IMG/VR virus record: IMGVR_UViG_3300026521_000471
Location: 160,468 to 224,467 of that record
Direction: 5' to 3' (one strand)
Length of the DNA: 64,000 nt
In this document: positions 32,987-60,060 of the stretch, piece after piece
How positions within the stretch are numbered: the stretch's first letter is position 1
How the letters are laid out: the number at the start of each line of letters is the position of its first letter
Position numbers and translations under genes: made by a program
The notes under the pieces: generated by a model
Database searches by the model: none
The model's input: the letters and a program-made list of their open reading frames with translations, nothing else
Told to the model about the DNA's origin: nothing

Positions 32987-33049
32987 TGTTAGTATTCCTT
33001 TTCTTTAATTATGCCATATTATAACATAACTTGACTAAAAAGTCAAGTT

Positions 33050-33508
33050 TTACGCTAATTCTTCTTCAAAAAGAAGCTCATAAATCAATGCGCTAGTAAG
33101 AGATTTACCGTTTACAGTAATTCGGATATTAATGTTTTGCACATACAACATAAGTTCGTTTCGTTTCCATGCTGCAATTTCTTCCTCTGTTGGTTCGCAG
33201 TTATCAACATTTACAAATTTATTTGTCCATAAGAATTCATCATCTGCATATGTTCTCAATTCATCTTTTAATGAGTCTAAATCAAAATCTACTAACACCT
33301 CTTTTTCAAAGTACTCTTCTAGATTTACAAGCAGTTCTTCTCTTAGATTTTCTGGTTCTACATGCCATAACATTTTCTCATTAGACCAATGATTTACATG
33401 ATCTAATTCACCTTCCAAATAATCATCTTGAAATACATCTACAAATGAAGAAATCTCTACTGTAAAAGTATCACTCACTAAATTTCTAATTTTTTGAATA
33501 GTTTCCAT
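33050..33508 (-). CDS. acidic hypothetical protein
   Basis: 152-aa ORF. Confidence 0.6.
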   Translation of the reverse strand: METIQKIRNLVSDTFTVEISSFVDVFQDDYLEGELDHVNHWSNEKMLWHVEPENLREELLVNLEEYFEKEVLVDFDLDSLKDELRTYADDEFLWTNKFVNVDNCEPTEEEIAAWKRNELMLYVQNINIRITVNGKSLTSALIYELLFEEELA

Positions 33509-33713
33509 TTTTATTCCCCCACTTTATTTTTTAACTCTTTGATTTTTGGTAAAACTTCTGATATATTTTGAGCTCCAACTTCCAACATAACCTGCATAAT
33601 AATATCCGATAATTTAACAGTTGCTTCAGACCATTGATTTTCTAATTTTTTATTTGACATTGTTTACACCTTTTATTTAAATTACTATATTATACTATAT
33701 TTTTAGAAATAAA

Positions 33714-34265
33714 TCAAGCCGTTTCATACTCTTTTTGAGATAAAACCTCTTTACATTTATTACAGCGATAAGTAGCTGTGCCTCTTAGGATTTTATTATG
33801 TCTCACAGTAGATAAGTTATGAGTATCACAAGCACAATAATAAGTATGAGTGTTTTTTCTTTTTGATTCTAAAATTGTACTACCAGAAAATAGTGATGTT
33901 GAAGCTTTACCACTTATACCAAAATGTGAACAAACCGCCTTAAACTCTTTACCATGTGGCATAACTCTCTTATACCCATTTCGACCTGTTGGGTATAAGT
34001 TTCTAACAACAGCATGGGCAAATTCATGAATCACTACCGCTGTTATATAAGTATCACCAAACTCTAAAAGTAACTCTTTGTTTAATTCAATGTAATTAAT
34101 TGTTTCACCGTATGCAGACGATTGATAAAATTGACCTAATGCTCTAACACTTTTTAATGTATAAACCACATCATAATCAAATTCTACATCCCATTCTTTT
34201 TTAGCATATTTAGCCAATTCATCTAGTTTCTTATCAACTTTTGTAGAGAGAGTTTTGAAATCCAT
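33714..34265 (-). CDS. SprT-like zinc metalloprotease
   Basis: HEFAH, PHGKEFK, YYCAC, RHNKI, YRCNKC. Confidence 0.88.
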   Translation of the reverse strand: MDFKTLSTKVDKKLDELAKYAKKEWDVEFDYDVVYTLKSVRALGQFYQSSAYGETINYIELNKELLLEFGDTYITAVVIHEFAHAVVRNLYPTGRNGYKRVMPHGKEFKAVCSHFGISGKASTSLFSGSTILESKRKNTHTYYCACDTHNLSTVRHNKILRGTATYRCNKCKEVLSQKEYETA

Positions 34266-34572
34266 CTTTTACACCTTTTCTTTAATTATGCCATATTATA
34301 CCATAAAAATAAAAAAATATCAAATTAAAAACATGATTTCTTTGTCTGTTAGTGGACGTCCTAATTGCTTGATAGTTTGTTCAATTAATAACTTATGAAA
34401 TTTTTTATCGATCTCTTCTTTTGTTAATCTTTTATCTTTACAGCTTTTAGACATTTTATTACCTTTATAATTAGATTTAAAGATGAGGACTACTATCGAT
34501 AAACATAAAATCATCTATCCCCCCATGATAAACAAAGTAAGTATTTTAAATCCTCACCTTCAAATCTAATAG

Positions 34573-34830
34573 TTAAACTATTAGAAATGGTTGTGCATAA
34601 GTTCCATTAGAAATTCTTTTATAACTTAGGTCGGTTTCAAAAGCTCTAATTTCATATGTATCATCATCTGTAAGCACCAATCTTACAGATGATTCCTTAC
34701 CATAGACTTCCTCAGTTTCTGAATCAACCATACGAATTTTACTATCTATGGTTAATACTCTACCGTTAATATCTTTGATTTTTAAAGCAATCATTTTAAT
34801 TATCCTCTTGCTCTTCACCAGTTTCATCAC
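34573..34830 (-). CDS. hypothetical protein
   Basis: Real start probably near 34794. Confidence 0.5.
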   Translation of the reverse strand: MMKLVKSKRIIKMIALKIKDINGRVLTIDSKIRMVDSETEEVYGKESSVRLVLTDDDTYEIRAFETDLSYKRISNGTYAQPFLIV

Positions 34831-35317
34831 TTACAACTACCACACCTTCACCATAAGTACTTTCAACAACCATTTTAATTGGTGCCATATCAGGCATTAC
34901 AACTGGATAATCCTTTGGATAGTGTTCAAGTTTAGAGATAAGATCAGCAACTGTAATAACTGATGGGATATGTTCTTGTATAAATTCTTTTAGCTCTTCT
35001 TGAAAATCTTCAAGTACACCTACTTCTCTCAAATCTGTTTCAAGCTGAAAATCATAATCGGTATTATTGATATTAATTTCGCTCTCAAGCACAGTAACAA
35101 TCATATCTTGAATAGTACCATAGATTAGTTCTTCTTCACCAACATTAACACTATCGATAAATATTTGGAGTGAATTCATATTAATAGTAATTCCTTCATC
35201 CATTTGATACTCAACCATTGCTTCAAAAGTACAGCCAATTTTATGACCATCTATTACACCTTCGATTTTATCACCTACCATAATACCATATGTTTGATAC
35301 ATAACTTCTGCATTCAT
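34796..35317 (-). CDS. acidic hypothetical protein
   Basis: AAGG RBS. Confidence 0.6.
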   Translation of the reverse strand: MNAEVMYQTYGIMVGDKIEGVIDGHKIGCTFEAMVEYQMDEGITINMNSLQIFIDSVNVGEEELIYGTIQDMIVTVLESEININNTDYDFQLETDLREVGVLEDFQEELKEFIQEHIPSVITVADLISKLEHYPKDYPVVMPDMAPIKMVVESTYGEGVVVVSDETGEEQEDN

Positions 35318-35320
35318 TTT

Positions 35321-35524
35321 TTATACCTTTGCTGTTTCTTTTTGAGCTATCTCTTTAATAACTCTTAGATAACCATTTAGATTCAATAACATAAGCTCTT
35401 TGAGAGTGATTAGTCTCTCTCCTCTATTAAGTATAAGTTCTTCACCTTTTAGGAACTGTTGAGATGGTATTTCTACCAAATCATTAGCTTCATTTACTTT
35501 AACTAAAATATCTAAATGACTCAT
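35321..35524 (-). CDS. hypothetical protein
   Basis: AAGG RBS. Confidence 0.55.
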   Translation of the reverse strand: MSHLDILVKVNEANDLVEIPSQQFLKGEELILNRGERLITLKELMLLNLNGYLRVIKEIAQKETAKV

Positions 35525-35534
35525 TTTTTATACC

Positions 35535-35963
35535 TTATGCGTGGATGTCTAGTTGTGAAACTGTTTTGTATTCTTCACAACCGAATTTAGATTCTGCAAT
35601 TTTTCTTGCTAGTAATGAACTTGTACTAGCTTCTCTTTGGAATGCTTGTAATAAAACATCATTCTCATTTTTTAGTTCTTTAATACGCTCTTCTTGCTTT
35701 CTGATAGTTTTTAAATGTTTATCATTTGTCTGCTCATAACTAAAAAGAGCATCATCTTGTGCTTTATATTTCATAAGCTTTTTGATTTCCTCTGATTGCT
35801 TTTTAACAACACCCATTAAAAACTCTGATGACTGTTCTTTTAACTCTTTATTTTCAGCTTTTAGTACTGCTACCTCAGCTAATAAATCGTTATAATCTCT
35901 TTTGATATTTTCCCAATCAGTTTTTGCAATTTTAACATATTTTGAACTAAACATTTTATACAC
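35535..35963 (-). CDS. coiled-coil protein
   Basis: Promoter cassette upstream; start probably at MFSSKY. Confidence 0.6.
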   Translation of the reverse strand: MYKMFSSKYVKIAKTDWENIKRDYNDLLAEVAVLKAENKELKEQSSEFLMGVVKKQSEEIKKLMKYKAQDDALFSYEQTNDKHLKTIRKQEERIKELKNENDVLLQAFQREASTSSLLARKIAESKFGCEEYKTVSQLDIHA

Positions 35964-35995
35964 CTTTTCTTTAATTATGCCATATTATAACATAT

Positions 35996-36298
35996 TTACG
36001 ATCTTTTGTCAACCATTTTAGGTGTTTTACTTGACGAATTGAAAAAATTTCCTTGAGGTGTTTTTTCATAAAATTTAATATATTTGTATCCTTTGCGAGT
36101 AATACGATAAACATTATCAACTACTTCCACCAAACCTTTCTCTCTCATAGCTTGATAGGTCATACCTTTTTTCTCAACCGTTTTAACTTGTTTAGTAGTT
36201 ATCTCTTCACCGTTATTCAACTTTACTAAACTATCCCAGTAGTAAGTAGTACCACTCTTTGTAATAGGTCTTGTTAGGGAATATCGTTCTTTTCTCAT
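35996..36298 (-). CDS. basic protein, possible winged helix
   Basis: KGLVEV..YRITRKG motif. Confidence 0.55.
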   Translation of the reverse strand: MRKERYSLTRPITKSGTTYYWDSLVKLNNGEEITTKQVKTVEKKGMTYQAMREKGLVEVVDNVYRITRKGYKYIKFYEKTPQGNFFNSSSKTPKMVDKRS

Positions 36299-36352
36299 CT
36301 TGTATCCTTTTTATTTAAGTTAGATATATTATATCATAATTTAGTTTTTTTA

Positions 36353-36721
36353 TCAAGCATTTTCGAGGTTTTCTAATCGTTCTTGAAGTTTTTTAATTTC
36401 TTTTTGTAACCGTCTAGTTAGTTTTTTAGCAATTTTTTTATACTCTTTTTCCATATGATTTTGAGCTTCTTCTTTACTATAAAAATATCTATCTTTAACA
36501 GATTCATAATCTTTAATAATCTTACCTGTTTCTACATTTTCTAAGAGAACAGCTTTTGCATATCTACCATCGTAAATACCTTTAAAAATATACTCTGTAA
36601 CCTTCTTAGTTTTAGACGATTTAACAAAGTCCAATCCCGTATCATCCAACTCAAATTCTGTCGGGTAATAAATATGATCACCTTCTACTAGATTCTTCTT
36701 TAATACGATATTAGATTCCAT
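36353..36721 (-). CDS. hypothetical protein
   Basis: AGGAG RBS. Confidence 0.6.
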   Translation of the reverse strand: MESNIVLKKNLVEGDHIYYPTEFELDDTGLDFVKSSKTKKVTEYIFKGIYDGRYAKAVLLENVETGKIIKDYESVKDRYFYSKEEAQNHMEKEYKKIAKKLTRRLQKEIKKLQERLENLENA

Positions 36722-36730
36722 ATTTTTCTC

Positions 36731-37354
36731 CTAATTAAATTCTTCATATTCTAAAGTTGTTTCTTGATATGGTTCGTCCATATCAATAGTTTGATAATTA
36801 CCTTCTTCTCTAAAAATATCGGGTGAGTGTGTACTAATTACAAATTTTGTTAATGGGCTAAAATTCATTATAATTCTAGGCCATTCTCTTGCAATTGCAA
36901 TATGTAATGATGTTTCTGGTAAATCTAAAAAGTAATAATCTGGTTCTGATAGAACTACCTTATATAGCATTACAAACATTCTAGTATATCCATTACCAAC
37001 CATACGTAAAACACTTCTAAGAAGATTACTATCATTCAAAGCATCTTCAACACTACCACCAACCCAACGTTTTAAATCATCTTGGAAGTCAAGCGAAAAA
37101 TCAGATAATTGTTTACATACAATTTTCAGTTCTTGGTCTGTTGCATTTTCAATCAATTCTGGTGCTTCGTACAATGCCATAAGAGCATCATATACAACAT
37201 ATGAATAACCTTTAGATTCACACCAAGCTGCCATTTTCATTATGGTTAATGTTTTACCGGTACCATTATATCCGATCAGATATGTTAAATCTTTATTAGT
37301 CCAAAGAAGTTTAGACTTAGGTAAATGTGATGGTAAGTTGAATAACACGTTCAT
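36731..37354 (-). CDS. small ABC/AAA_21-like ATPase
   Basis: GYNGTGKT, LDLPETSLH, ISTHSP. Confidence 0.75.
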   Translation of the reverse strand: MNVLFNLPSHLPKSKLLWTNKDLTYLIGYNGTGKTLTIMKMAAWCESKGYSYVVYDALMALYEAPELIENATDQELKIVCKQLSDFSLDFQDDLKRWVGGSVEDALNDSNLLRSVLRMVGNGYTRMFVMLYKVVLSEPDYYFLDLPETSLHIAIAREWPRIIMNFSPLTKFVISTHSPDIFREEGNYQTIDMDEPYQETTLEYEEFN

Positions 37355-37370
37355 AATTTTATCCTCTCTA

Positions 37371-37838
37371 TTAAAATACGAAGAGTGTTTTTAACTCTTC
37401 AGGTAAATATGAAGTATCACTATGATACTCAGCCATAAAAATTTTAGCTTCGGGATTAACAGCTTGGTATTTAACAACCTCTTCTACTATTTCTGAATAA
37501 GGGTTATTTTTCACATAATCCAAAAAAGTATCATCATCGTATGGTCCTCTTAATCCTAATAAGACTTTAATCTTATATGATGAAAGTGTATAAGCTCTTA
37601 AAATTTCCAAGTAATCAGGAATAATTTCTCTCATAGATTTATTGGTTCTCTCTTGAAACCAAATATTGAGCTGATATAAAATATTTTGCTCATCAGTTGC
37701 AGGTGAAAGAAAAGCACTAAGCATGAATTCAGCTAATTGATCTATCTCACCATATTCAATAGTTTCTTGATTCTCTTTTAAAAATGAAAATAATTCTTCA
37801 AAAGAATCAAATATTTGAATATTATTTTTCATCTGCAT
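37371..37838 (-). CDS. hypothetical protein (C-terminal LPEELKTLFVF)
   Basis: 155-aa ORF. Confidence 0.6.
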   Translation of the reverse strand: MQMKNNIQIFDSFEELFSFLKENQETIEYGEIDQLAEFMLSAFLSPATDEQNILYQLNIWFQERTNKSMREIIPDYLEILRAYTLSSYKIKVLLGLRGPYDDDTFLDYVKNNPYSEIVEEVVKYQAVNPEAKIFMAEYHSDTSYLPEELKTLFVF

Positions 37839-38031
37839 ATTCCCAATTTAACTCAATATCGTAACGATTAGGTCTTCTCGGTTCTACATCCTTACCATTG
37901 ATTGCAACAACATATTCTTGACCATTAATAATCTCAATAGTAGCTGTATCATTAAGAGCATGTAAAGCGCTAAAACATAAAACAAATGTTAAAAATAAAC
38001 CCGCTAATGGATGTCTTTCAAAAAAATTCAT
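37822..38031 (-). CDS. small membrane/secreted protein
   Basis: N-terminal hydrophobic helix; promoter cassette. Confidence 0.6.
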   Translation of the reverse strand: MNFFERHPLAGLFLTFVLCFSALHALNDTATIEIINGQEYVVAINGKDVEPRRPNRYDIELNWEYADEK

Positions 38032-38108
38032 TTTTGATCCTTTTCTTTAATTATACCATATTATAACATATTCAAAGAAAAAAATCAAGTTATTCTAGGG
38101 AATAACCC

Positions 38109-40235
38109 CTAAAATAACTCTTTATTTGTGTTTGTTAAAGTATAGAGTACATCCATCTGTTGAATATATTTAATGACTGCTGAGTCTTTAATATAATGCC
38201 CACATCCAACCAACATTTCATACTTTTCAAGACATACTAGAGTAAGTGATGATAAATCTTCTTGGTGAGGTTTTAAATCCAAGACCATCATCATATATTT
38301 AGCATCTCTTCCAAGATCATGTTCTTGGTTATGTTTCACCGCTTGAGCTAAGTGATTAATTTCAGATGATTCATCAATGTTTTTTATAATTGAATTCAAA
38401 AGGGTAGCATCATTTAAAAGTTTCTGTACTAATGAATATTGGGTACTAGATGTCGAACCAAAATAATACTCCATAGTCATACCACTTGCATCAAACTGCT
38501 CTTTAATATGATCAAAAAGATTAACAAGATTATGATCTTTTTTTCTCATAGCTTTTCTAAGACCAACAATAGGTTTATCACTATCAATAAGCTCTAATTT
38601 TATGGCTGCAGATACAATACTTTTTATATCTGTAACTTCTTCTTCATTATAGTAAGTGTTAAATCTATCAAGTTCAACATAATATCCGTCGAGTTTTGTT
38701 AAATCTGCATCAACAGTTTTTAGTGGCCATCTATCAGTTTGATTCCAACCGTAATCAGAATATACAGGGATTTGAATTTCTTCATCCCCAGTATTTGAGA
38801 CTTTTTTTGCTCTTCTAACTTTATCAAGAGTAGAAACCTTTATCATATCAGGATTACCCAATTTCTCACTTAATTCATCAAATGAAAGGGTAGTCTTGAT
38901 AATATATGGTCTTAGACGACCATTATAATCGGTAATGAATTGCTTAACTCTTGCATCTATTGCTTTATCATCTGGAGTTGCATAAAATAACAATCCTTTT
39001 TTTGCACTAACAATATTTACATGCCAATAATAAGTCTCTGTTTGTGCATCCCAATTTCTCGATTTTGAGTATTCCTGCTTACGGAATTTACCATTGTAAT
39101 TTTTTTCAAAATATCTATACTCAACAACATCATCAGCATCAAGTCTTAATTCCGTTGATGAAACATCAATACCTCTCCATCTTGAATCACTACTTTCATC
39201 CACATATTTACGAATATCCGAATGATACCCAAAACTAGACATAATACTCTCATATTTCAATCTAGCTTCCCATTCAGTTGGAGCATCTTCGATAGCCTTT
39301 GCAATCATAGCAGGTAATTCTTCTAAAACCTTTTGAGCATATGAAAGAATGTTATTAACCGTTGCTTCATCATAAGATAATGCTTCTCTACTTGGAGCAA
39401 TATTTACATCACCAATATTAACTTCAAATAAAATACTCATTTCTAATAGTTCTTTAATCGCTCTACTAGATTGCTCATATTTAGTACCCATATCTCTAGT
39501 AGATATAGGATATGAAATTTGCCCTTGAATAACTCTAGCGTGATAATACCCGCTGCGCTGTTGCCCTACCATTTTCCATTTTGTACCTTCATAAAGATAC
39601 TCTTCATCCGTCTGCCATTCAAAGTTAGAGTTACCTGAAATTGTAGGTTTTACTTTAAAATATTTGAGTTGGTTATTTACCTCTCTCGCAAAATATCCAA
39701 TATCTTCTTCTTTGATAGCAACTTCGATTTCAATACCATTTTCTTCATCTGTTTCCTCTGAGTGAAACTTTGCAACTGAAGGAATTCTACTAGAATCTAA
39801 AAATGCAGAATAGATGGTTTTAGTTCCGCTGTAGTAACTAGTAATAGTAAATGAATCAGATACACCAAAAGGTGATTTACTACCCAGTCCTAAACACCCA
39901 ACTACATCATTGTTATTTGTTTTTGTTGATTCAAAAAATGTAGTATAAACAGAATTGATCTCTTCATCTGAAAGACCTGGACCAAAATCACGAATTTTAA
40001 AAGTTGGATCAAGTGAATTTGGTAATTTGATATGAAATGGCTCATCTGATTTACCAACCATAACATGAGCATCATATGCATTCGTAGATAGCTCTCTAAT
40101 CATAGACCCTAGTGGATTTGAATAAAGATTTGAGCTCAAAATCTGGAATGCTTTTGCACTCGCTTTGATAGTAAATTCCTTTACATTTTGAGCTCCGCTT
40201 ACTTGAACATCTTGGACTTCATTTGCTAAAATCAT
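38109..40235 (-). CDS. rIIA: RIIA-like protein (GHKL ATPase N-terminus)
   Basis: KAFQILSSNLYS, IRELSTNAYDAH, IRDFGPGLS, GCLGLGSKSPF, IAPSREALSY. Confidence 0.9.
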   Translation of the reverse strand: MILANEVQDVQVSGAQNVKEFTIKASAKAFQILSSNLYSNPLGSMIRELSTNAYDAHVMVGKSDEPFHIKLPNSLDPTFKIRDFGPGLSDEEINSVYTTFFESTKTNNNDVVGCLGLGSKSPFGVSDSFTITSYYSGTKTIYSAFLDSSRIPSVAKFHSEETDEENGIEIEVAIKEEDIGYFAREVNNQLKYFKVKPTISGNSNFEWQTDEEYLYEGTKWKMVGQQRSGYYHARVIQGQISYPISTRDMGTKYEQSSRAIKELLEMSILFEVNIGDVNIAPSREALSYDEATVNNILSYAQKVLEELPAMIAKAIEDAPTEWEARLKYESIMSSFGYHSDIRKYVDESSDSRWRGIDVSSTELRLDADDVVEYRYFEKNYNGKFRKQEYSKSRNWDAQTETYYWHVNIVSAKKGLLFYATPDDKAIDARVKQFITDYNGRLRPYIIKTTLSFDELSEKLGNPDMIKVSTLDKVRRAKKVSNTGDEEIQIPVYSDYGWNQTDRWPLKTVDADLTKLDGYYVELDRFNTYYNEEEVTDIKSIVSAAIKLELIDSDKPIVGLRKAMRKKDHNLVNLFDHIKEQFDASGMTMEYYFGSTSSTQYSLVQKLLNDATLLNSIIKNIDESSEINHLAQAVKHNQEHDLGRDAKYMMMVLDLKPHQEDLSSLTLVCLEKYEMLVGCGHYIKDSAVIKYIQQMDVLYTLTNTNKELF

Positions 40236-40301
40236 TTAATTTCCTTTTCTTTAATTATGCCATATTATAACATAATTGAAAAGAAAAGTCAAGTTTTCTC
40301 A

Positions 40302-41390: not shown

Positions 41391-41402
41391 TATTAGATTC
41401 CT

Positions 41403-41684
41403 TTATGATCTGATTGTTTTTAGAGAGCCTTCAAAAAGACTTTCAATATTGTTATTTTCTAATGACTCTTTAGGGATAGCCATCAACACATCTTCAAAAA
41501 ACACAGAAATATTTGTAGCTTCATTCTGTTCATGGTATTCTTTTTGAATAAAACGGTAAATATCTTTTAACTCTCTTTGTCTACTAACTCTATCAATATA
41601 CTGATAAAGAAAAATATTACGAGCAAAAAAATAAACGATAATAGCTCCTGCTGCAAATCCTAATACACCTACTATAAAAATCAT
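41403..41684 (-). CDS. single-TM protein
   Basis: Hydrophobic N-terminus. Confidence 0.55.
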   Translation of the reverse strand: MIFIVGVLGFAAGAIIVYFFARNIFLYQYIDRVSRQRELKDIYRFIQKEYHEQNEATNISVFFEDVLMAIPKESLENNNIESLFEGSLKTIRS

Positions 41685-42864: not shown

Positions 42865-42921
42865 ATTTTTTTCCTTTTATTAATTATAATATATTATACT
42901 CTGGTTTCACTTAATTTTGGT

Positions 42922-43476: not shown

Positions 43477-43517
43477 ACATAAATAAAAATGTATAATTTA
43501 TAAAAAGGATACCACAA

Positions 43518-45246: not shown

Positions 45247-45247
45247 A

Positions 45248-51832: not shown

Positions 51833-51949
51833 TATTTTACAAAAAACTAAAAAATATTTTTTAAGTTTTTTTAGTTTTGGGGTTATTTTTATATTCCTTT
51901 AAGTAAATTTGTGATATAATATTTCATATTAAAAATAAAAAGGAAAAAC

Positions 51950-53074: not shown

Positions 53075-53207
53075 ATCTACCTTAAAATAACTTCAAATTT
53101 TGGTCATAGATAATATTCTATGACCATTCTTCATTTTTTTACCTCTAAACTTGACTTTTAATTTAAATTTTGATATAATATAGTAATTTTAAATTAAAGG
53201 AACATTT

Positions 53208-54068
53208 ATGTCAGAAGTACAAATCCCATTATCCGAACAAGAATCTTTTAAATCGTTTGAAGAAGCCTATCATTCAGTTCAAGGAACAAGAACATCTATG
53301 GTTATGAAATTTAAATCATATACCGGTCCTAGCTATGGTATTGATGACTTATTTTCTGTTGCAGATGAAGCAATCGTTAAAGCATGGAATGATTGGGATC
53401 CATCAATGTCAAAGTTTAATACATATGTTCAAAATCATATTCAATGGGGTATTTGGAATTTTTTAAATGCTATGAATAGCACCTTTAAAACTAATGCAGT
53501 AACCACATATGAATTGACTCAAGAAGGTGACTCATATAAGGAGATAAAGGAGAGAGGTTTAACAAAATCTAAAGAATTCAATGATTTGCATGAGCTTGAT
53601 GGGAGTGAACAGGCAAAAGATCGATTTAATAGAGATCTATTCAATGAGTATGTTCGTTTTGAAACATCAAAAAGACGACCATTTAAACTTGCAACTGCAT
53701 CAAATTTTCAAACTCAAGATGCCGATGATTTTGATATTATGGAAACTGCGGTAGGGACTCCATTTGCAGAAAAATCATGGATAGAAGATTTAAATATGAC
53801 AGAAGCAGAAGTTGAACTTGAAATTACCAAATTAGATAGAGACAAGCGTAGAGTAGCAGAAGCATTACTAAATGGTGAAACTATATCTGATTTAGCAAAA
53901 GAGTTTGGAGTTTCAAAAATAGCATTTATGCAGATGTTTGCACCTGAAACATCCGGAACTAGAGGTAAAGCAAAAATATCAAGAAAACAAGCACGACTAG
54001 CTCATGCAAAAAAACAACGAGCTTTAAAACTTGCGCAAATAAATGAAAAAAGTGCCAATGAGGCTTGA
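53208..54068 (+). CDS. sigma70-family-like factor
   Basis: Region-2-like DDL..ADEAIVKAWNDWDPSMSKFNTYV; region-4-like HTH GETISDLAKEFGVSK. Confidence 0.7.
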   Translation: MSEVQIPLSEQESFKSFEEAYHSVQGTRTSMVMKFKSYTGPSYGIDDLFSVADEAIVKAWNDWDPSMSKFNTYVQNHIQWGIWNFLNAMNSTFKTNAVTTYELTQEGDSYKEIKERGLTKSKEFNDLHELDGSEQAKDRFNRDLFNEYVRFETSKRRPFKLATASNFQTQDADDFDIMETAVGTPFAEKSWIEDLNMTEAEVELEITKLDRDKRRVAEALLNGETISDLAKEFGVSKIAFMQMFAPETSGTRGKAKISRKQARLAHAKKQRALKLAQINEKSANEA

Positions 54069-54121
54069 TTTATTTCCTAATTTTAGATATAATTATATAT
54101 ATTTAAATTAAAGGAACAATT

Positions 54122-54511
54122 ATGAAAGTTTGGACTGAAAATTATGGAGCTGATGCAGATGGTAACAGAGGTATTTTAACAACTTTTGCAGAGTTAGAGC
54201 CAGAGGATGATGAGGTAGTTATTGAAGAACTATATGAATCATTTATTGAAGATAGAGGCGATTTACCAAAAACGATGAATGTTTATATAGATGACTTTGA
54301 ATTTGAAGTTGATACTGAAGATTATCGTGATCAATTAGTTGGGCGTTTAATGGAAGATGAAGATACAGATTTAGAAGATAAATTCCTAGTTCTTTATTGG
54401 CTTAAAGAGAATGAGACTGATGATTATAAGAACGAACTCGATTTGGTAACTGCTAAATTAACAGCAAAAGTAGCTGATACAACCGAACGATTGATTGAAG
54501 AATATCTCTAA
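54122..54511 (+). CDS. acidic hypothetical protein
   Basis: Promoter cassette upstream. Confidence 0.6.
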   Translation: MKVWTENYGADADGNRGILTTFAELEPEDDEVVIEELYESFIEDRGDLPKTMNVYIDDFEFEVDTEDYRDQLVGRLMEDEDTDLEDKFLVLYWLKENETDDYKNELDLVTAKLTAKVADTTERLIEEYL

Positions 54512-54574
54512 AAAGCTTGACTTTTTAGTCAAGTTATGTTATAATATGGCATAATTAATCAAAAGGATAACAAA

Positions 54575-54850
54575 ATGGTAAAAGTTAAAGTTTCAAATAT
54601 GGTAGGTAATAGTGGTAGAGAAGTAGCAAATCAATTTATCATCGAAACAGATGAAGGTAGATTTTTTCAATCATACGAAACGATCATAGCATTTATTGCA
54701 AATGATGGTTCTGTTACACTAAACAATATTTATGATCATTCAACTACAACTGGGAAATACAGAAATGCATTCTTAGGTGATAGTGGTGTTGCTGAAACAA
54801 GAAAAAAAGTTGCAAGTGGAGAATATAAACTTGCGGATTTAAATTCATAA
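54575..54850 (+). CDS. conserved phage hypothetical protein
   Basis: ANQFII..FQSYETIIA..STTTGKYRN.FL. Confidence 0.65.
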   Translation: MVKVKVSNMVGNSGREVANQFIIETDEGRFFQSYETIIAFIANDGSVTLNNIYDHSTTTGKYRNAFLGDSGVAETRKKVASGEYKLADLNS

Positions 54851-54861
54851 GGATAGAGGTC

Positions 54862-55080
54862 ATGACAATTTTATTAACAGCATACAACCCTAACTTTAGT
54901 GATAAAGTTAAAGCTAATATTAGTGCTAAAGTTGAGCCTACTATGGTTTCAACCCATAGCGATAGTCAATCATTCGATTTGGAAGCTGCAGTAAATATTA
55001 TTACTCATTTTGGAAATGATAATGATCAAGAGATTCTAGAAAATTTGAATCAACAACATGTGGATTATATTGAATTTTAA
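54862..55080 (+). CDS. hypothetical protein
   Basis: RBS present. Confidence 0.55.
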   Translation: MTILLTAYNPNFSDKVKANISAKVEPTMVSTHSDSQSFDLEAAVNIITHFGNDNDQEILENLNQQHVDYIEF

Positions 55081-55150
55081 TTCAAAATACTTGACTTTAT
55101 ACCTAAATTAGGGTATAATATATTATATAAAAAGAAAAGGATAAAAACAA

Positions 55151-55465
55151 ATGCCATTAACAAAAGAAATCAAAATGGGAATTTACACTAAAGGTTCTGG
55201 GATTAGACTTATCGGTGAATTAGATTTAATCACTCAAGATGAAGGCCATAAAGATGAAGCGATTTATTTGGTTACAATGGCCATGATGAGAGACCCGAGA
55301 GAACCAATCGGTGAAAAAGAGATGAAAGAATACGAAAATGCTGTCAAATCTATGTTTAGAGATCATAGACATGATTATAAAGCTAAAGATCGTGCTGAAG
55401 CAGATAAATTCATTGAATATAATATAGGGTCTTGGGAAGAAGTAAGATCTCTATCTAAAATCTAA
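55151..55465 (+). CDS. hypothetical protein
   Basis: Promoter cassette upstream. Confidence 0.6.
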   Translation: MPLTKEIKMGIYTKGSGIRLIGELDLITQDEGHKDEAIYLVTMAMMRDPREPIGEKEMKEYENAVKSMFRDHRHDYKAKDRAEADKFIEYNIGSWEEVRSLSKI

Positions 55466-55552
55466 AACCCTTTGTGGACTTTTTGAGCCGGTAAGTCCCT
55501 TATAAAGAAACATGGCAATTCCTTTGTAAGAAACTCTATACACTATAACACT

Positions 55553-55661
55553 TTGTGGAAAGAGATGGGAACATCTGGTGGAGGGGCTATCTCTTCCACA
55601 ATAGTAAGAATAGTGAAGATGAATTTGGGTGGTGTGCACTTTTTCATCTTCACTATTCTTA
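55553..55661. other. two adjacent long hairpins (candidate structured RNA)
   Basis: 13-bp stem with one bulge (55553-55601); perfect 19-bp stem (55605-55623/55643-55661). Confidence 0.65.
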
Positions 55662-55685
55662 TTGTATAATAAATAGTAGAAAACT

Positions 55686-56708
55686 ATGGAGTTATATATG
55701 CCTCAATCAAAAACAATCAAAATACAAGTTTGGACAGATTTAAATTATTGTAGAGTAATTGGTATATGGTATCCTGAAGAACCAGAAGATGCTATTGATT
55801 TTAATGATGCACCATATCTGTTAGTATTATCTAGTATTTTTGAACCTCGTACTGAAGTTATGGGTAATAATCCTATTGCACCAGGTCAACATCCAATACC
55901 TAAAGATTTTTTAGAAAAACAAATAAGACATATAAGTTATCTTTTTGCAAATGATTTTGGTACTTTTCAACCATATTCAAAAGGGATAGCAAAAACATTT
56001 TTAGCTAAACAAACTGTATCATATAAAAAAGTAAAAGAGTTTGATATGACCGTTACACCTGCATCTGGCTCTATATCATTAAAGGCATTTAGAGATAGTA
56101 TTGACCAATATACAGAAGAAGAACAAGAAGCTATCCAAGTAATGACTATTGGTGAAAATCCTCAAGATGCTCATGCTAAAGATATTGAAGATTTTATACA
56201 TATAGAAAAAAGCGATAACATTGAACAATATATCTCAATAACAAAACTTACCCCAGTTTATGGTATAGATGATCCATATATTGTTAAAACAAGTCTCCCT
56301 GAAGATCCTGCATTTTCATCTCTTCCTCCAGGTACAGAAGATGCAGAAGCATCACAAGAATTTATAGAAACCGTTGAAGCTGCAAAAACAGAAGATACAA
56401 TCAATAGAGAGACTTTAATAACTTATGATACTTTGTCTGAAACACCTCAACCCGTTCTTGATGAAAACGGTGAGCAAGTTCTTAATGAAAACGGTGAACC
56501 TGTTACCGAATTAAGAGAACCAACAAGAGAAGAAGTTTTAGAGGCTTTATTAAAAGATAAAGAGGCTCAAATTGCAGCCCTTCAACCTCAACCAGTAAAG
56601 GAAAAATTACCTCAACCATTATCAGAAGCAGATCTATTCCCAGAGGAAGCTGCAGACCAATTAGAAAGAGAAACCCTCAATACAACATTCACACCAAAAG
56701 AGATGTAA
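55686..56708 (+). CDS. acidic Pro/Glu-rich protein, possibly late/virion-associated
   Basis: AATAAATA and GGAG before ATG 55698; VLDENGEQVLNENGEP repeat. Confidence 0.6.
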   Translation: MELYMPQSKTIKIQVWTDLNYCRVIGIWYPEEPEDAIDFNDAPYLLVLSSIFEPRTEVMGNNPIAPGQHPIPKDFLEKQIRHISYLFANDFGTFQPYSKGIAKTFLAKQTVSYKKVKEFDMTVTPASGSISLKAFRDSIDQYTEEEQEAIQVMTIGENPQDAHAKDIEDFIHIEKSDNIEQYISITKLTPVYGIDDPYIVKTSLPEDPAFSSLPPGTEDAEASQEFIETVEAAKTEDTINRETLITYDTLSETPQPVLDENGEQVLNENGEPVTELREPTREEVLEALLKDKEAQIAALQPQPVKEKLPQPLSEADLFPEEAADQLERETLNTTFTPKEM

Positions 56709-56712
56709 TTTT

Positions 56713-56741
56713 TTGATAATGATTTTAATAATCATTATCAA
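56713..56741. promoter_or_regulatory. Fur-box-like palindrome D
   Basis: ttgataatgattttaataatcattatcaa, exact reverse complement of B. Confidence 0.65.
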
Positions 56742-56824
56742 TTAGCCCCCATTTAAATTAATAAACTTGACTTTTTACCTATTTTATGTTATAATATGGC
56801 ATAATTAAAGAAAAGGTGTAAAAG

Positions 56825-57169
56825 ATGATTATCACAACAAATAATGATATTAAAATCTACCAAATTTTTGAAGATATATATGATGGTATTGATAATTTTA
56901 TGGATATAGAAAGTCGTAATGTTATTGAACTTACAAAAATTATTATTAATAAAAACTCTCAGTTTAAGACACCAATATTTTTAGACAGTTATAGTAAAAG
57001 AATTGATAAATCATTTAAAAGAGAAACTGTGTGGTTTATTAAATGTGATAGTATAGTTTTTGATTGTAAAAGTGAAGAAATTGCAAATGCACTTTTTGAC
57101 AAAATTGCCTTAGTTTTAGAATTTGGCGATGAACCTTTAAAAACTGTCGATGACCTTTTTGTATTTTAG
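56825..57169 (+). CDS. hypothetical protein (C-terminal DDLFVF)
   Basis: Promoter cassette upstream. Confidence 0.6.
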   Translation: MIITTNNDIKIYQIFEDIYDGIDNFMDIESRNVIELTKIIINKNSQFKTPIFLDSYSKRIDKSFKRETVWFIKCDSIVFDCKSEEIANALFDKIALVLEFGDEPLKTVDDLFVF

Positions 57170-57178
57170 GAGTACATT

Positions 57179-57583
57179 ATGAAAATAACAAACAAAAAAT
57201 TACTATCAGAAATAAACAAAGTTCTCCCTTACAGTTGTTCTGCAGCCGAATCTAATAGTACTGATAGAGCTATATATGTTAGATGTAGTTCTTTACAGAC
57301 AAAACAATTAGAGCAATTAAAAACAAAAATCCTAAATCATCTCAAATCTCTACCATATATGGATGAAAGTGTGGATATTATATCTAGAGTTACAATCACT
57401 CAAAAACCTGTTCTAGATGGTTTCTATGTATTTGTATGGGGTAATAAAGAGGATGAAAAAAGTTTTCTAACTGCAAAACTTACTTTAGAAACTGAATCGT
57501 TATTAGATATTAAAAAACAGGAATTAGCATTACGAGAAAAAATGCTTTCTACCGTAGAAGCATTAGCTGCATTAAAGGACTAA
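57179..57583 (+). CDS. hypothetical protein
   Basis: AGGAG RBS. Confidence 0.6.
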   Translation: MKITNKKLLSEINKVLPYSCSAAESNSTDRAIYVRCSSLQTKQLEQLKTKILNHLKSLPYMDESVDIISRVTITQKPVLDGFYVFVWGNKEDEKSFLTAKLTLETESLLDIKKQELALREKMLSTVEALAALKD

Positions 57584-57585
57584 AA

Positions 57586-58140
57586 ATGGATAATTTAATT
57601 TTAAAATCATCTAATAAATTTAAAATCGATGAATTTAAACGCATCATAGGTGATACTCTTATAATTGAAAATGGAGAAGATTTACCTGAAGTTGATGGTA
57701 CTGCTGTTGAGGTTGTAATTTATAAATCAATTGCAGCAGGTAAAAATGTAATTGTCGAAGATACAACACTCACTATTGAAGGTGAAGAGGTAGTCGACAT
57801 CAAATGGAAAATTGAAGAATTGCAAAATAAATATTCACTAGTGCCAGCTATTTGGAAAACTTATCTTGCTTATAATGATGGAGAAGAAATTCGAGTATAT
57901 GAAGGTATAGTCAATGGTGTTATAATTCCAGATAGCAAAGATAAAGGATACGGATTTGATCCTTATTTTTTACCTGATGGAAGTGATCGTACTCTTGCTA
58001 AACTTTTAGATGACGGTGAAAAGGACAAATATAGTGCTAGACAAAAAGCATTGATCAATTTAGTTACTAATCATTTATTTGATAGAATACCAACAAAAAC
58101 AGTCCCTGTTTGGTCAGGAAAATATCAAAATCAAACTTGA
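57586..58140 (+). CDS. Ham1/RdgB-family non-canonical purine NTP pyrophosphatase
   Basis: SSNKFKIDE, DLPEV, VEDT.L, GYGFDPYF, KDKYSAR. Confidence 0.88.
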   Translation: MDNLILKSSNKFKIDEFKRIIGDTLIIENGEDLPEVDGTAVEVVIYKSIAAGKNVIVEDTTLTIEGEEVVDIKWKIEELQNKYSLVPAIWKTYLAYNDGEEIRVYEGIVNGVIIPDSKDKGYGFDPYFLPDGSDRTLAKLLDDGEKDKYSARQKALINLVTNHLFDRIPTKTVPVWSGKYQNQT

Positions 58141-58194
58141 CTTTTTACCTATTTTATGTTATAATATGGCATAATTAAAGAAAAGGTGTAAAAG

Positions 58195-58446
58195 ATGAAA
58201 AAGCTAGTTATATCAGTTGTTACAGATGAAGGTAAAAAATATATCAAAAAAGGATTCTTAGGTTCAAAGACAGTTAGTACAGTTGAACTAGAAGATGCAA
58301 CATTATATTCAAAACCTGATGATGTTGAATGGGTTTTAGCAAATTATGAACTACCTTCTCCAGTTATTGAAGTAGTCGATATTCAAATTTCAAAATCATT
58401 GGAATCTGCAAAAGAAAAATATTTAGCATATGCCGAAATGCTTTAA
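58195..58446 (+). CDS. hypothetical protein
   Basis: Promoter cassette upstream. Confidence 0.6.
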   Translation: MKKLVISVVTDEGKKYIKKGFLGSKTVSTVELEDATLYSKPDDVEWVLANYELPSPVIEVVDIQISKSLESAKEKYLAYAEML

Positions 58447-58456
58447 AGGATAAAAG

Positions 58457-58663
58457 ATGAATTTAGAAGAAAGAATTAATAAAAGAGCAAAAGAGATAGA
58501 AGCCTCATTTCCGATGGATGTTGAAGCTGTTGCAATTGATGTTGAAGAAGATGGCAACAACACTTATGTAAGTTGGATTGTTTTAGATAATAGTATCTAT
58601 GATGTCACACATGCTCAAATTAGAAACTTCGATGAAAAATTAGAAGGGGTAGAAAATGAATAA
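58457..58663 (+). CDS. small acidic protein
   Basis: AAGGA RBS. Confidence 0.55.
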   Translation: MNLEERINKRAKEIEASFPMDVEAVAIDVEEDGNNTYVSWIVLDNSIYDVTHAQIRNFDEKLEGVENE

Positions 58664-58907
58664 TATATCTTCATTACCAGAAGAGGTAGATCATTTCTTA
58701 GCAGACTTAGCACAATATGGTTCAAATCCAGAAATAGACTATAATGATATTATTAATTTTGCAAATGCAAATGATACAGATAGTATTCTATCAATAAAAG
58801 CTCATATTGCAGATATAGCAGAGTTAGATTTTGATTTTGAAGATGATGAAGTAATTATCTCTTTAGATGCAATAGCTTCTTTAGTAAAAAATACTGAAAA
58901 CTCTTGA
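58656..58907 (+). CDS. small acidic protein, paralog of 45248-45496
   Basis: Visible similarity. Confidence 0.65.
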   Translation: MNNISSLPEEVDHFLADLAQYGSNPEIDYNDIINFANANDTDSILSIKAHIADIAELDFDFEDDEVIISLDAIASLVKNTENS

Positions 58908-58961
58908 CTTTTTACTCAAATAATGTTATAATATGGCATAATTAAAGAAAAGGTGTAAAAG

Positions 58962-59192
58962 ATGAAAAGATTCAAAGTGATTAAAGAATCGGAAAACTTT
59001 GGAAGAGAAGTTGTTTATGAAGCAGATAATAGAGAGGATGCAGAAACTTCTCTTATCGATTGTATAGCATGTACAATCTCAAACTTCGATGAGTATAGTT
59101 GTGATGATATTGATGAAATTCAATATCAAGGTTTTGAAGGTTATGGTAATGGAATCATATACATAGAAGATGATGGTATCAAACCATTTTAA
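58962..59192 (+). CDS. small acidic protein
   Basis: Promoter cassette upstream. Confidence 0.6.
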   Translation: MKRFKVIKESENFGREVVYEADNREDAETSLIDCIACTISNFDEYSCDDIDEIQYQGFEGYGNGIIYIEDDGIKPF

Positions 59193-59208
59193 TAAGAAAG
59201 GGTAAAAA

Positions 59209-59523
59209 ATGTTAATTTTTTCTAAACAAGTCTTTGAAGTTGATTTTGAAATTGAAGATACTTCTATTGAAGGAAAATACCAATATTCTACACAAACTGA
59301 CAACTTTGTCGGGTATGAGTATAATACAGAGGTTGAACTAAATTCAGATATTAAAGTTGAATCAGACATTGCAACAACCATCCTCGATAGTGATGATATT
59401 GAAAATATTATCGAGGAAATGGATATTGATTATGCAATGGACGAAATTCTTATCATATCTAAACAGGATATAGCAGATTATATCGGTGCAGATACAATTA
59501 AATCAATTAAAGTACAGGAGTAA
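59209..59523 (+). CDS. small acidic protein
   Basis: AAGGG RBS. Confidence 0.6.
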   Translation: MLIFSKQVFEVDFEIEDTSIEGKYQYSTQTDNFVGYEYNTEVELNSDIKVESDIATTILDSDDIENIIEEMDIDYAMDEILIISKQDIADYIGADTIKSIKVQE

Positions 59524-59526
59524 AAT

Positions 59527-59721
59527 ATGAATCCTAAAGCATTTAACATCATCTTCTGGGGAATTTTCTCAATATCACTCATTTCTATCATAGTACAAAT
59601 GGTAGTAGTAGGGTGGTTAGGTGTAACGGCAGTTAAAGAAGTTCAAGATAACAATGGAAGTGTAGGACAAACTATCGGTAAATTTATCGGTGATGTTCAA
59701 AAAGGCATGAAAAGTAACTAA
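59527..59721 (+). CDS. small membrane protein
   Basis: Hydrophobic helix; AGGAG RBS. Confidence 0.6.
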   Translation: MNPKAFNIIFWGIFSISLISIIVQMVVVGWLGVTAVKEVQDNNGSVGQTIGKFIGDVQKGMKSN

Positions 59722-59784
59722 ATTGCTTGACTTTTTACTCAAATAATGTTATAATATGGCATAATTAAAGAAAAGGTGTAAAAA

Positions 59785-60060
59785 ATGAATATCGAAAGAG
59801 TAGTAAATACAATAGCAAACAATTTAGTTGACCAAGAGGTTTTAAATGAAGCATTAGAGGCTATCGAAAATGATGATATGGATAACCAATCATATTGGCA
59901 AGCAGCAGGCTCAATCGTTGAACCGGAATTAAATTCGGAAGATGAAGAAGAGTATTTTGAAATGTTGGAAAATGATCCTCAAAACTGGATAGGTTTTATC
60001 ACTAGCATCGATGAAAGATTTCTTCCAATTGCTGAAAAAGTTGTAGAGTACGGATATTAA
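59785..60060 (+). CDS. small acidic protein
   Basis: Promoter cassette upstream. Confidence 0.6.
   Translation: MNIERVVNTIANNLVDQEVLNEALEAIENDDMDNQSYWQAAGSIVEPELNSEDEEEYFEMLENDPQNWIGFITSIDERFLPIAEKVVEYGY

What the first reader, a model, noticed from the sequence alone, without database searches (positions are those of the whole stretch)
33000..59790. Identical promoter spacer alleles shared between the two oppositely oriented arms
Seen: the normally unconstrained -35/-10 spacer recurs exactly: ttttagtcaagttatg (~33030 minus; 54522), ttttacctattttatg (~45845 minus; 56772; 58142), ttttactcaaataatg (~46655 minus; 58909; 59732). Selection for promoter strength does not explain this. Inference: recent copying, gene conversion or inversion between arms.
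Basis: partly seen in the sequence, partly recalled or inferred. Interest (0 to 1): 0.6.

Follow-up and report, generated by a model that had tools for sequence, protein, structure and literature searches.

The report
Phage early-promoter cassettes homogenised by copying
A large uncultured phage drives its early genes from about 27 copies of one short promoter-leader-ribosome-site cassette, and the identical "spacer" versions seen at several places are best explained by patches of sequence being copied from one cassette to another, a known way for big phages to reshuffle their early genes.

Summary
The three 16-nt spacer strings occur exactly where stated (2, 3 and 3 copies) and nowhere else in the 224-kb virus record. 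A column-shuffle null expects 0.01 identical pairs among 27 promoters; 5 to 7 are seen.

They lie inside a 60-70-bp cassette: cTTGACT, a 17-nt spacer, TGnTATAAT, then a leader and ribosome-binding site. It recurs about 27 times, only at window 29.9-62.3 kb, in two divergent arms of small unannotated early genes around rIIA and rIIB.

A collinear relative, about 82-91% identical, settles the interpretation. Of 25 orthologous promoters, 18 differ at 0-3 of 23 positions. Seven differ at 5-10 positions although their flanks are 83-97% identical. These seven include every B and C copy with an ortholog there except 56767. The relative has its own repeated alleles at other loci, and four + arm cassettes share a genome-specific leader variant. 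This is concerted evolution by short-patch copying, plus gene-module swaps bounded by cassettes.

Allele A differs. It is a -35/inverted -35 hairpin and stays at both loci in three lineages.

No inversion between arms appears in any assembly. The read-level test could not be run. The closest known system is the PeSL cassettes of T4-type phages. Moderately interesting, not new in kind.

The parts
29840..62300 (.). Early-gene region. About 27 near-consensus extended -10 promoters (cTTGACT, 17 nt, TGnTATAAT). The minus-strand ones lie at 29.9-47.4 kb and the plus-strand ones at 49.7-62.3 kb, with the divergence point near 49.6 kb.
   Evidence: No comparable promoter occurs in the other 190 kb of the record.
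32984..33047 (-). Type-1 cassette, allele A (CTTGACT-TTTT-AGTCAAG hairpin), in front of a 304-aa AAA-like gene (32072-32986).
   Evidence: hairpin -14.3 kcal/mol, z -5.1. The ortholog in phage 2 is identical.
54516..54577 (+). Type-1 cassette, allele A, in front of a 91-aa gene (the DUF8033 mark is precomputed on its ortholog).
   Evidence: -10.7 kcal/mol, z -4.3. Phage 2's ortholog has 2 substitutions outside the core stem; phage 3's is identical.
45803..45862 (-). Type-1 cassette, allele B, minus arm, leader variant ATGACAT.
   Evidence: The phage 2 ortholog carries TTTCCTTCTAATTATGT, 8 of 23 positions different with flanks 87.5-90.5% identical.
56766..56827 (+). Type-1 cassette, allele B, plus arm.
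   Evidence: The phage 2 ortholog is B' (2 differences). An AT-rich hairpin plus C5 element lies just upstream at 56714-56750.
58136..58197 (+). Type-1 cassette, allele B, identical to the 56767 copy over 66 nt. It heads a module (gene 58195-58446) that phage 2 replaces with other genes and promoters.
46612..46671 (-). Type-1 cassette, allele C, minus arm (spacer ends ATGA, leader ATGACAT).
   Evidence: The phage 2 ortholog is TTGACA TTCCATCTAATTTATGT with a TATGAT -10 box, 9 of 23 positions different.
58903..58964 (+). Type-1 cassette, allele C, plus arm.
   Evidence: The orthologs in phages 2 and 3 carry allele D, 7 of 23 positions different, with flanks 94.5-97% identical, binomial P = 4e-5.
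59726..59787 (+). Type-1 cassette, allele C, plus arm.
   Evidence: The orthologs carry B' (phage 2) and B'' (phage 3). The gene upstream is unrelated in phage 2.
40233..40293 (-). Type-1 cassette in front of rIIA (allele E', 2 nt from the 42103 copy).
   Evidence: In phage 2 it equals allele E exactly. A 73%-identical relative, L019, keeps the leader exactly but has another spacer.
42044..42104 (-). Type-1 cassette, allele E (TTTCTTTCTAATTATGT).
34263..38089 (-). Three more type-1 cassettes with single-copy spacers (-35 boxes at 34323, 36012 and 38088).
61771..61832 (+). Type-2 cassette whose -35 box and spacer form a second perfect palindrome (CTTGATT-AATA-AATCAAG).
   Evidence: -10.6 kcal/mol, z -4.5.

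Best explanation
The window is the last 64 kb of a 224-kb record of an uncultured, low-GC (about 27%) jumbo phage. Its early genes, small unannotated ORFs together with rIIA, rIIB, SIR2, Ham1 and a GerE-like protein, are read by the host sigma-70/sigma-A polymerase (inferred from the consensus). Transcription starts from about 27 copies of one 60-70-bp cassette: an A-rich stretch, cTTGACT, a 17-nt spacer ending in TG, TATAAT, a fixed leader (ATGGCATAATTAAAGAAAAGG in 13 'type 1' copies), then the Shine-Dalgarno sequence and ATG.

Each variable 8-11-nt spacer core sits between two blocks that are identical in all copies: 11-12 nt on the left and 30 or more nt on the right. The cassettes can therefore pair with one another during phage replication and recombination.

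Two outcomes are visible when genomes are compared.
1. Short patches of 30 nt or less, holding the spacer core, are copied from one cassette to another (gene conversion or template switching). This yields the same allele at unrelated genes, on either arm.
2. Crossovers inside cassettes swap, insert or delete the neighbouring gene modules.

The identical A, B and C alleles are thus products of concerted evolution of a dispersed repeat family. They are neither independent selection nor whole-operon duplication. The pattern is shown; the enzymology is inferred.

Allele A is a special case. Its spacer holds an inverted copy of the -35 box, which gives a 9-bp hairpin. This hairpin is probably kept by selection, as an attenuator of read-through or as a protein site. 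That part is inferred.
For: 1. The repeats are real and confined to the early region. Chance expectation is 0.01 pairs against 5-7 seen.
2. Identity is limited to the cassette. Upstream DNA is unrelated, and the first genes behind same-allele promoters are not paralogs.
3. The relative, phage 2, is collinear at about 82-91% identity. Of 25 orthologous promoters, 18 differ at 0-3 of 23 positions and 7 differ at 5-10. For five of the seven the binomial P lies between 4e-5 and 8e-3 given local flank divergence. The alignments show the change confined to roughly -40 to -16.
4. Paralogs are more alike than orthologs. B occurs three times in phage 1, against B' twice in phage 2 and B'' in phage 3. 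D occurs twice in phage 2 and once in the part of phage 3 sampled. The link between ribosome site and start codon reads GGTGTAAAAGATG at three phage 1 loci (the fourth, 59727, reads GGTGTAAAAAATG), against GGTGTATAAGATG at four phage 2 loci and two phage 3 loci.
5. Mosaic pattern. The minus-arm B and C copies share ATGACAT while the plus-arm B and C copies share ATGGCAT, so all four combinations exist.
6. Module changes are bounded by cassettes. The promoter at 58137 with its gene is replaced in phage 2. There is a small-ORF indel behind 33717, together with a switch of leader type. The gene upstream of 59727 is unrelated in phage 2.
7. More distant relatives keep the architecture and leader but not the spacers. 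L019 has the exact leader with a different spacer. L009 has 12 promoters, ten with a common leader, all with different spacers. Over longer times the core is therefore free to vary.
8. Three independent assemblies (four contigs) of 99.4-99.5% identical strains give the same alleles, so this is not an assembly artefact.
9. Precedent: recombination between PeSL promoter cassettes in T4-type phages (PMC2839356, PMC4122927).
Against: - Only two to three lineages are available, so donor, recipient and timing of each swap cannot be assigned.
- No RecA- or RecT-family recombinase was found in the 85%-complete record, so the machinery is unknown.
- Allele A is stable at both loci, which fits selection as well as copying.
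- Swaps could have been fixed because they change regulation. Sequence alone cannot separate neutral homogenisation from selected rewiring.
- Promoter activity itself is inferred from the consensus and was not measured.
Confidence: 0.72

Rival explanations
1. The spacer alleles are selected sites: operators for phage or host regulators, or functional hairpins. They would define regulatory classes of early promoters, and their identity would be maintained by purifying selection at each locus.
For: - Allele A is a perfect 7+4+7 palindrome that folds well.
- The palindrome covaries with the -35 box: TTGACT with AGTCAA, and TTGATT with AATCAA, at window 61772, L026:10858 and L029:908.
- A is kept at both loci in three lineages, and phage 2's substitutions fall outside the 6-bp core stem.
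- An early gene encodes a GerE / sigma-70 region 4-like helix-turn-helix protein.
- PeSL stem-loops can lie between or over the promoter boxes (PMC2839356).
Against: - B and C have no dyad symmetry and do not fold.
- Their cores are not enriched elsewhere in the genome.
- They are not kept at orthologous loci. Three of the four B and C loci with an ortholog carry another allele in the relative.
- Genes behind same-allele promoters share no annotation.
- Even if the alleles are functional, an identical 8-11-nt core at new loci still has to arrive by copying.
Confidence: 0.15
2. Reciprocal recombination between inverted cassettes on the two arms (inversion isomers) spread the alleles, and the genome exists as a mix of orientations.
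For: Cassette pairs 53-63 nt long and 90-96% complementary lie in inverted orientation 8.6-26 kb apart. They are plausible substrates.
Against: - Every assembly that spans the region has the same order and orientation: the window, ERZ27262639, ERZ27262685, Ga0256843 and the phage 2 contigs.
- The alleles at 58904 and 45861 changed with both flanks retained, which an inversion cannot do.
- Assemblies do not show rare isomers, and reads could not be examined.
Confidence: 0.05
3. Old duplications of whole promoter-plus-operon units between the arms, followed by divergence of the genes and strict conservation of the promoters.
For: One gene pair in B-headed operons is paralogous: 45248-45496(-) and 58656-58907(+), 36% amino-acid identity.
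Against: - At 36% protein identity a spacer core would not stay identical unless constrained. Yet the same loci carry other alleles in phage 2. The ortholog of 58656-58907 is behind D and the ortholog of 45248-45496 is behind an E-like allele.
- No other same-allele genes are paralogs.
Confidence: 0.04
4. Assembly artefact: short repeats were collapsed or mis-joined by the assembler.
For: Logan k=31 contigs break inside the cassettes, so the repeats do trouble assemblers.
Against: The cassettes are shorter than a read. JGI and MEGAHIT k141 assemblies from different samples agree base for base on all alleles and on gene order.
Confidence: 0.01

Closest known systems
PeSL (promoter-early stem-loop) regulatory cassettes of T4-type phages (Arbiol et al. 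2010, PMC2839356; Comeau et al. 2014, PMC4122927)
   Same: - A strong sigma-70-like early promoter with an A/T-rich upstream stretch, ending in a Shine-Dalgarno sequence and start codon.
- Dozens of copies concentrated in a plastic region of small orphan genes.
- Differences between close relatives (gene insertion, deletion, replacement) bounded by the cassettes.
- Some copies carry a stem-loop that overlaps the -35 box and spacer, one of the PeSL subclasses.
- rIIA and rIIB are present.
   Different: - Most cassettes here, including B and C, have no stem-loop, and there is no G-run/C-run stem.
- The leader is conserved to the base.
- The cassettes form two divergent arms.
- The phage gave no match to T4 Gp23 or the T4 portal.
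- What is seen here in addition is short-patch replacement of the spacer core with both flanks kept. The 2010 paper does not discuss this; the word 'spacer' does not occur in it.
- Mini-circles were not tested.
Concerted evolution by gene conversion in dispersed repeat families (general principle, from established knowledge)
   Same: Copies within a genome are more alike than orthologous copies between genomes. Converted tracts are short and bounded by identity. Polymorphisms combine in mosaics.
   Different: The unit is only 60-70 bp and regulatory. The copies head unrelated genes and lie in both orientations.
Conserved early promoters of large lytic phages such as T4 (review PMC2988021; T5 and SPO1 from my own knowledge)
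   Same: Near-consensus -35 and -10 boxes, extended -10 TG, A-rich upstream region, clustered early transcription units read by host polymerase.
   Different: In those systems conservation is ascribed to selection for strength, and the spacer cores are not reported as shared alleles. Here exact cores recur and move between loci.

Membership tests
PeSL cassettes (T4-type phages) | Strong sigma-70-like early promoter with an A/T-rich upstream region | tested here: met
   27 sites score 5-6 of 6 in both hexamers, 24 with the TG of the extended -10 box, and have A-rich upstream stretches. Activity was not measured.
PeSL cassettes (T4-type phages) | A stable stem-loop (terminator or attenuator) within or next to the promoter, often a G-run paired with a C-run | tested here: not met
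   Only allele A (2 copies) and the 61772 cassette fold (z -4.3 to -5.1). B, C and E do not (0 to -3.3 kcal/mol, z about 0). AT-rich hairpins followed by C5 lie upstream of only 2 cassettes (46670, 56767) and at the arm junction.
PeSL cassettes (T4-type phages) | Shine-Dalgarno sequence and start codon of the downstream gene at the 3' end | tested here: met
   AAAGG(A/T)G followed by ATG 5-9 nt later in almost every copy; 62271 has no ORF behind it.
PeSL cassettes (T4-type phages) | Concentrated in plastic regions in front of orphan genes | tested here: met
   All copies lie in 32 kb of a 224-kb record. Most downstream ORFs have no Pfam match.
PeSL cassettes (T4-type phages) | Indels and replacements between close relatives have cassettes at their borders | tested here: met
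   The 58137 module is replaced, a small ORF differs behind 33717, and the gene upstream of 59727 is unrelated.
PeSL cassettes (T4-type phages) | Excised mini-circles formed by recombination between neighbouring cassettes | not testable with these tools
PeSL cassettes (T4-type phages) | The host phage is a T4-like myovirus | tested here: inconclusive
   rIIA and rIIB are present. Pfam Gp23 and Portal_T4 found nothing, but the controls did not ring either and the record is 85% complete.
Concerted evolution by gene conversion | Paralogs within a genome more alike than orthologs between genomes | tested here: met
   B three times against B' twice; D twice; C three times with no C at those loci in phage 2; a genome-specific leader variant at three to four loci each.
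Concerted evolution by gene conversion | Short replaced tracts with conserved flanks on both sides | tested here: met
   58904 and 45861: the change is confined to about 25-30 nt, with flanks 87.5-97% identical.
Operator or regulator-binding site in the spacer | Kept at the same loci in relatives | tested here: not met
   Met for A only. Three of the four B and C loci with an ortholog carry another allele in phage 2.
Operator or regulator-binding site in the spacer | Binding by a cognate regulator | not testable with these tools
   A GerE / sigma region 4-like protein is encoded at 60749-61054.

The most novel reading that the evidence does not exclude
The spacer cores may be addresses rather than passengers. 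The phage's early GerE / sigma-70 region 4-like protein, or another early factor, would recognise particular cores. The clearest candidate is the -35/inverted -35 palindrome of allele A and its covarying relatives. Patch conversion between cassettes would then move genes from one temporal or regulatory class to another. That would be a recombination-driven way of rewiring early gene expression, beyond the gene shuffling described for PeSLs.
Probability: 0.1. Interest if true: 0.65.

Novelty: new member of a known kind. Interest (0 to 1): 0.4.

Why it matters
It extends the idea of mobile regulatory cassettes from T4-type coliphages to an unrelated-looking, low-GC jumbo phage known only from metagenomes. 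It also adds a clean natural example of short-patch exchange inside promoters. The same gene keeps both of its flanks but receives another cassette's spacer.

For annotation, it warns that identical promoter pieces in phage early regions signal homogenisation rather than recent gene duplication or inversion. For phage engineering and evolution, it marks the sites where this lineage gains, loses and re-heads its host-takeover genes.

Tried and rejected
- **Known phages:** a megablast of 8 kb against GenBank phages gave nothing.
- **IMG/VR:** an exact search for the cassette gave nothing. The close relatives came only from the metagenome scan and from exact-protein look-ups.
- **Fetching more of the phage 2 contigs:** The genome search with locus handles failed because the records are not held. 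I worked around this through the look-up of encoding contigs.
- **Paralogy of same-allele genes:** rejected. One 36% pair exists, but its B association is not kept in phage 2.
- **Extra copies of the cores:** none outside promoters beyond chance.
- **Recombinases:** no RecA or RecT family match in the record.
- **T4 capsid and portal families:** no match, but the controls were silent, so this is uninformative.
- **PHROG scan of the ten largest proteins of the record:** mostly 'unknown function'. It did not place the phage.
- **Allele order:** A, B, C run in the same left-to-right order on both arms. I considered this and dismissed it as unremarkable (about 1 in 6 by chance).


Full report
**1. 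The observation**

The three strings are present exactly as described.
- A (TTTTAGTCAAGTTATG): 33025-33040(-) and 54523-54538(+).
- B (TTTTACCTATTTTATG): 45840-45855(-), 56773-56788(+) and 58143-58158(+).
- C (TTTTACTCAAATAATG): 46649-46664(-), 58910-58925(+) and 59733-59748(+).

None of 100 dinucleotide shuffles gave a match. The window is the last 64 kb of a 224,467-bp IMG/VR virus record, and the strings occur nowhere else in it.

**2. What the strings sit in**

An alignment of the eight sites shows conservation far beyond the two promoter hexamers. It runs from cTTGACT through the spacer, the TG of an extended -10 box and TATAAT. It continues through a fixed leader, ATGGCATAATTAAAGAAAAGG, to the start codon.

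A scan of the whole record finds about 27 such near-consensus promoters. All lie at window 29.9-62.3 kb. The minus-strand ones are at 29.9-47.4 kb and the plus-strand ones at 49.7-62.3 kb.

Thirteen carry the 'type 1' leader given above. The rest carry a looser 'type 2' leader (ATAGGTA... or ATAGTA...). Spacers fall into sub-families:
- TTTTA..., which holds A, B and C;
- TTTCTTT..., which holds E at 42103 and E' at 40292;
- TATTT....

The spacer is not wholly free, because it starts T-rich and ends (A/T)TATG. I therefore shuffled the spacer columns among the promoters.

Identity stops at the cassette borders.
- Within-arm pairs are exact for 58-66 nt.
- Between-arm pairs are exact for 23-43 nt, with 1-3 further mismatches.
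- Upstream DNA and coding sequence are unrelated.
- The first genes behind same-allele promoters are not paralogs and share no Pfam family.

**3. Context**

The region encodes:
- rIIA at 38109-40235(-), with 28-34% identity to annotated rIIA genes;
- rIIB at 51950-53074(+), from a Pfam mark on the ortholog;
- SIR2, two Rep_3 initiators and AAA-type proteins;
- Ham1, NUDIX and a GerE / sigma region 4-like protein;
- many small ORFs without matches.

This looks like the host-takeover early region of a jumbo phage. GC content is about 27%. T4 capsid and portal families were not found, but that search had no positive control.

**4. Relatives**

An exact-pattern scan of metagenome contigs with the leader found the window's own contig and three others. 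Protein look-ups added more.
- **Phage 2** is Ga0256837_1000002 plus Ga0256837_1000401. It matches ENA contig k141_25039 base for base. It is collinear with the window at about 82-91% identity.
- **Phage 3** consists of two short ENA contigs. It groups with phage 2.
- **L033, L034, L045 and L047-L049** are 99.4-99.5% identical strains of the window's phage from other samples. They carry the same alleles at every promoter.
- **L019** is 73% identical in rIIA. It keeps the leader to the base but has another spacer.
- **L009** has 44% rIIA identity. It has the same architecture with its own conserved leader, and all 12 of its spacers differ.

**5. The decisive comparison**

I compared 25 orthologous promoter pairs between the window and phage 2.
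- Eighteen pairs differ at 0-3 of the 23 positions of -35 box plus spacer. This is what the local divergence of 5-17% predicts.
- Seven pairs differ at 5-10 positions:

| Window promoter | Window allele | Allele in relatives | Differences (of 23) | Flank identity | Binomial P |
|---|---|---|---|---|---|
| 45861 | B | TTTCCTTCTAATTATGT, one step from E | 8 | about 89% | 2e-3 |
| 46670 | C | TTGACA TTCCATCTAATTTATGT | 9 | about 85% | 5e-3 |
| 54065 | TATTTCCTAATTTTAGA | TTGATT TTTTAATCAAAATATGT in phages 2 and 3 | 10 | about 88% | 1e-4 |
| 58904 | C | D, TTGACA TTTATTCCAATTTATGT, in phages 2 and 3 | 7 | 94.5-97% | 4e-5 |
| 59727 | C | B' in phage 2, B'' in phage 3 | 5 | about 91% | 5e-2 |
| 62271 | TATTTACTTTTTTATGT | TTGACT TTTTAATCAAATTATGT | 8 | about 87% | 8e-3 |
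| 34323 | TTTTTTTATTTTTATGG | TTGACA TTTATTCTCTTTTATGT | 6 | about 83% | 0.2 |

The alignments show nearly unbroken identity on both sides and a block of changes only between about -40 and -16.

Phage 2 has its own repeated alleles:
- D twice, at adjacent promoters;
- B' twice, at the orthologs of 56767 and 59727;
- E twice, plus one copy a single step away;
- an A family of three.

The link between ribosome site and start codon also sorts by genome. It reads GGTGTAAAAGATG at three + arm loci of the window's phage (the fourth, 59727, reads GGTGTAAAAAATG). It reads GGTGTATAAGATG at four loci of phage 2 and two of phage 3. The same substitution at three to four loci per genome cannot reasonably be independent.

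Within the window, spacer allele and leader variant combine in all four ways. B and C on the minus arm both have ATGACAT. B and C on the plus arm both have ATGGCAT.

Together this is the signature of concerted evolution by short-tract copying among cassettes.

**6. Larger events at the same sites**

- The B cassette at 58137 and its 83-aa gene are replaced in phage 2. The replacement holds a 76-aa gene, an A-type promoter, a 113-aa gene and a D promoter. The right border lies at the ribosome site and start codon of the next, orthologous gene.
- Behind the 33717 promoter the window has an extra small ORF and a type-2 leader. Phage 2 has a type-1-like leader directly on the next gene.
- Upstream of 59727 the gene is unrelated in phage 2.

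These match the modular shuffling described for PeSL cassettes in T4-type phages. There, recombination between promoter cassettes deletes, inserts and replaces orphan genes and yields mini-circles (PMC2839356, PMC4122927).

**7. Allele A is different**

CTTGACT-TTTT-AGTCAAG is a perfect palindrome. As RNA it folds into a 9-bp hairpin:

| Site | Energy (kcal/mol) | z-score |
|---|---|---|
| A at 54517 | -10.7 | -4.3 |
| A at 33046 | -14.3 | -5.1 |
| 61772 palindrome | -10.6 | -4.5 |
| B and C | 0 to -0.6 | about 0 |

The inverted half covaries with the -35 box: TTGACT goes with AGTCAA, and TTGATT goes with AATCAA at 61772, L026:10858 and L029:908.

A is unchanged at the ortholog of 33046. At the ortholog of 54517 it is identical in phage 3. 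In phage 2 it has two substitutions just outside the 6-bp core stem.

For A, selection on a hairpin or on a dimer-binding site is therefore plausible. A PeSL subclass with the stem-loop over the -35 box and spacer is described.

**8. Inversion**

Cassette pairs in inverted orientation are possible substrates (53-63 nt, 90-96% complementary). Yet no assembly shows an inverted segment. The swaps at 58904 and 45861 kept both flanks, which an inversion would not.

No reads were laid, so this part stays untested at the population level.

**9. Rivals**

- *Selection for specific sites* explains A but not B or C. B and C have no symmetry, do not fold, are not enriched elsewhere and are not fixed at their loci.
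- *Old operon duplication* is contradicted by the different alleles at the same loci in phage 2.
- *Assembly artefact* is excluded by base-for-base agreement of independent assemblies.

**10. Verdict**

The thing itself is a PeSL-like family of early promoter-leader cassettes in an uncultured low-GC jumbo phage. It is a new member of a known kind, and it shows unusually clear short-patch spacer exchange.

Unknown are the direction and age of each event, the enzymes involved, and whether swaps matter for regulation.

Noticed in passing
window 20970-21351 (-): A full-length tmRNA gene (Rfam 115.5 bits; ARAGORN tag peptide ANTKLYIPQTARVAA) carried by the phage record.
   Followed up: no
window 62271-62760 (+): The promoter at 62271 has no ORF behind it. 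About 190 nt (roughly 62390-62580) are 97-100% identical between the window and phage 2, although the surroundings are about 85%. There is no Rfam match, so this is a candidate non-coding RNA or origin element. It is followed by a 46-bp tandem repeat (62578-62715) with 3 copies here and 2 in strains L033/L034 and in phage 2.
   Followed up: partly
window 46672-46719, 49512-49559, 49593-49629, 56714-56750: Four copies of an AT-rich hairpin (TGATAATGATT, loop, AATCATTATCA) followed by TTAG and a run of C. Two sit just upstream of cassettes (46670, 56767) and two face each other at the junction of the arms. They fold at -5 to -14 kcal/mol. They may be a terminator or a protein site.
   Followed up: partly
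window 43518-44678 (+) and 50612-51832 (-); L026:4267-5460: Two Rep_3-family replication initiator genes, each pointing against the genes around it. Phage 2 has a third at the arm junction, 72% identical to part of the first and in the opposite orientation. Plasmid-type initiators are odd in a jumbo phage early region.
   Followed up: no
L026:12372-13559: Phage 2 carries an IS605 OrfB/TnpB (Cas12f-like) insertion between the orthologs of window genes 55151-55465 and 55686-56708. It is absent from the window, and the JGI assembly of phage 2 breaks there.
   Followed up: no
window 38109-40235 (-) and 51950-53074 (+): rIIA and rIIB homologs lie on opposite arms, 12 kb apart, rather than adjacent as in T4.
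   Followed up: no
window 60749-61054 (+): A 101-aa early protein with a GerE/LuxR helix-turn-helix that also matches sigma-70 region 4. It is a candidate regulator of the -35-containing palindromes.
   Followed up: no
G000:C1:121726-123351 (outside the window): The record encodes a GroEL-type chaperonin (PHROG 5725, E 9e-145). Most of its largest proteins match only PHROGs of unknown function.
   Followed up: no
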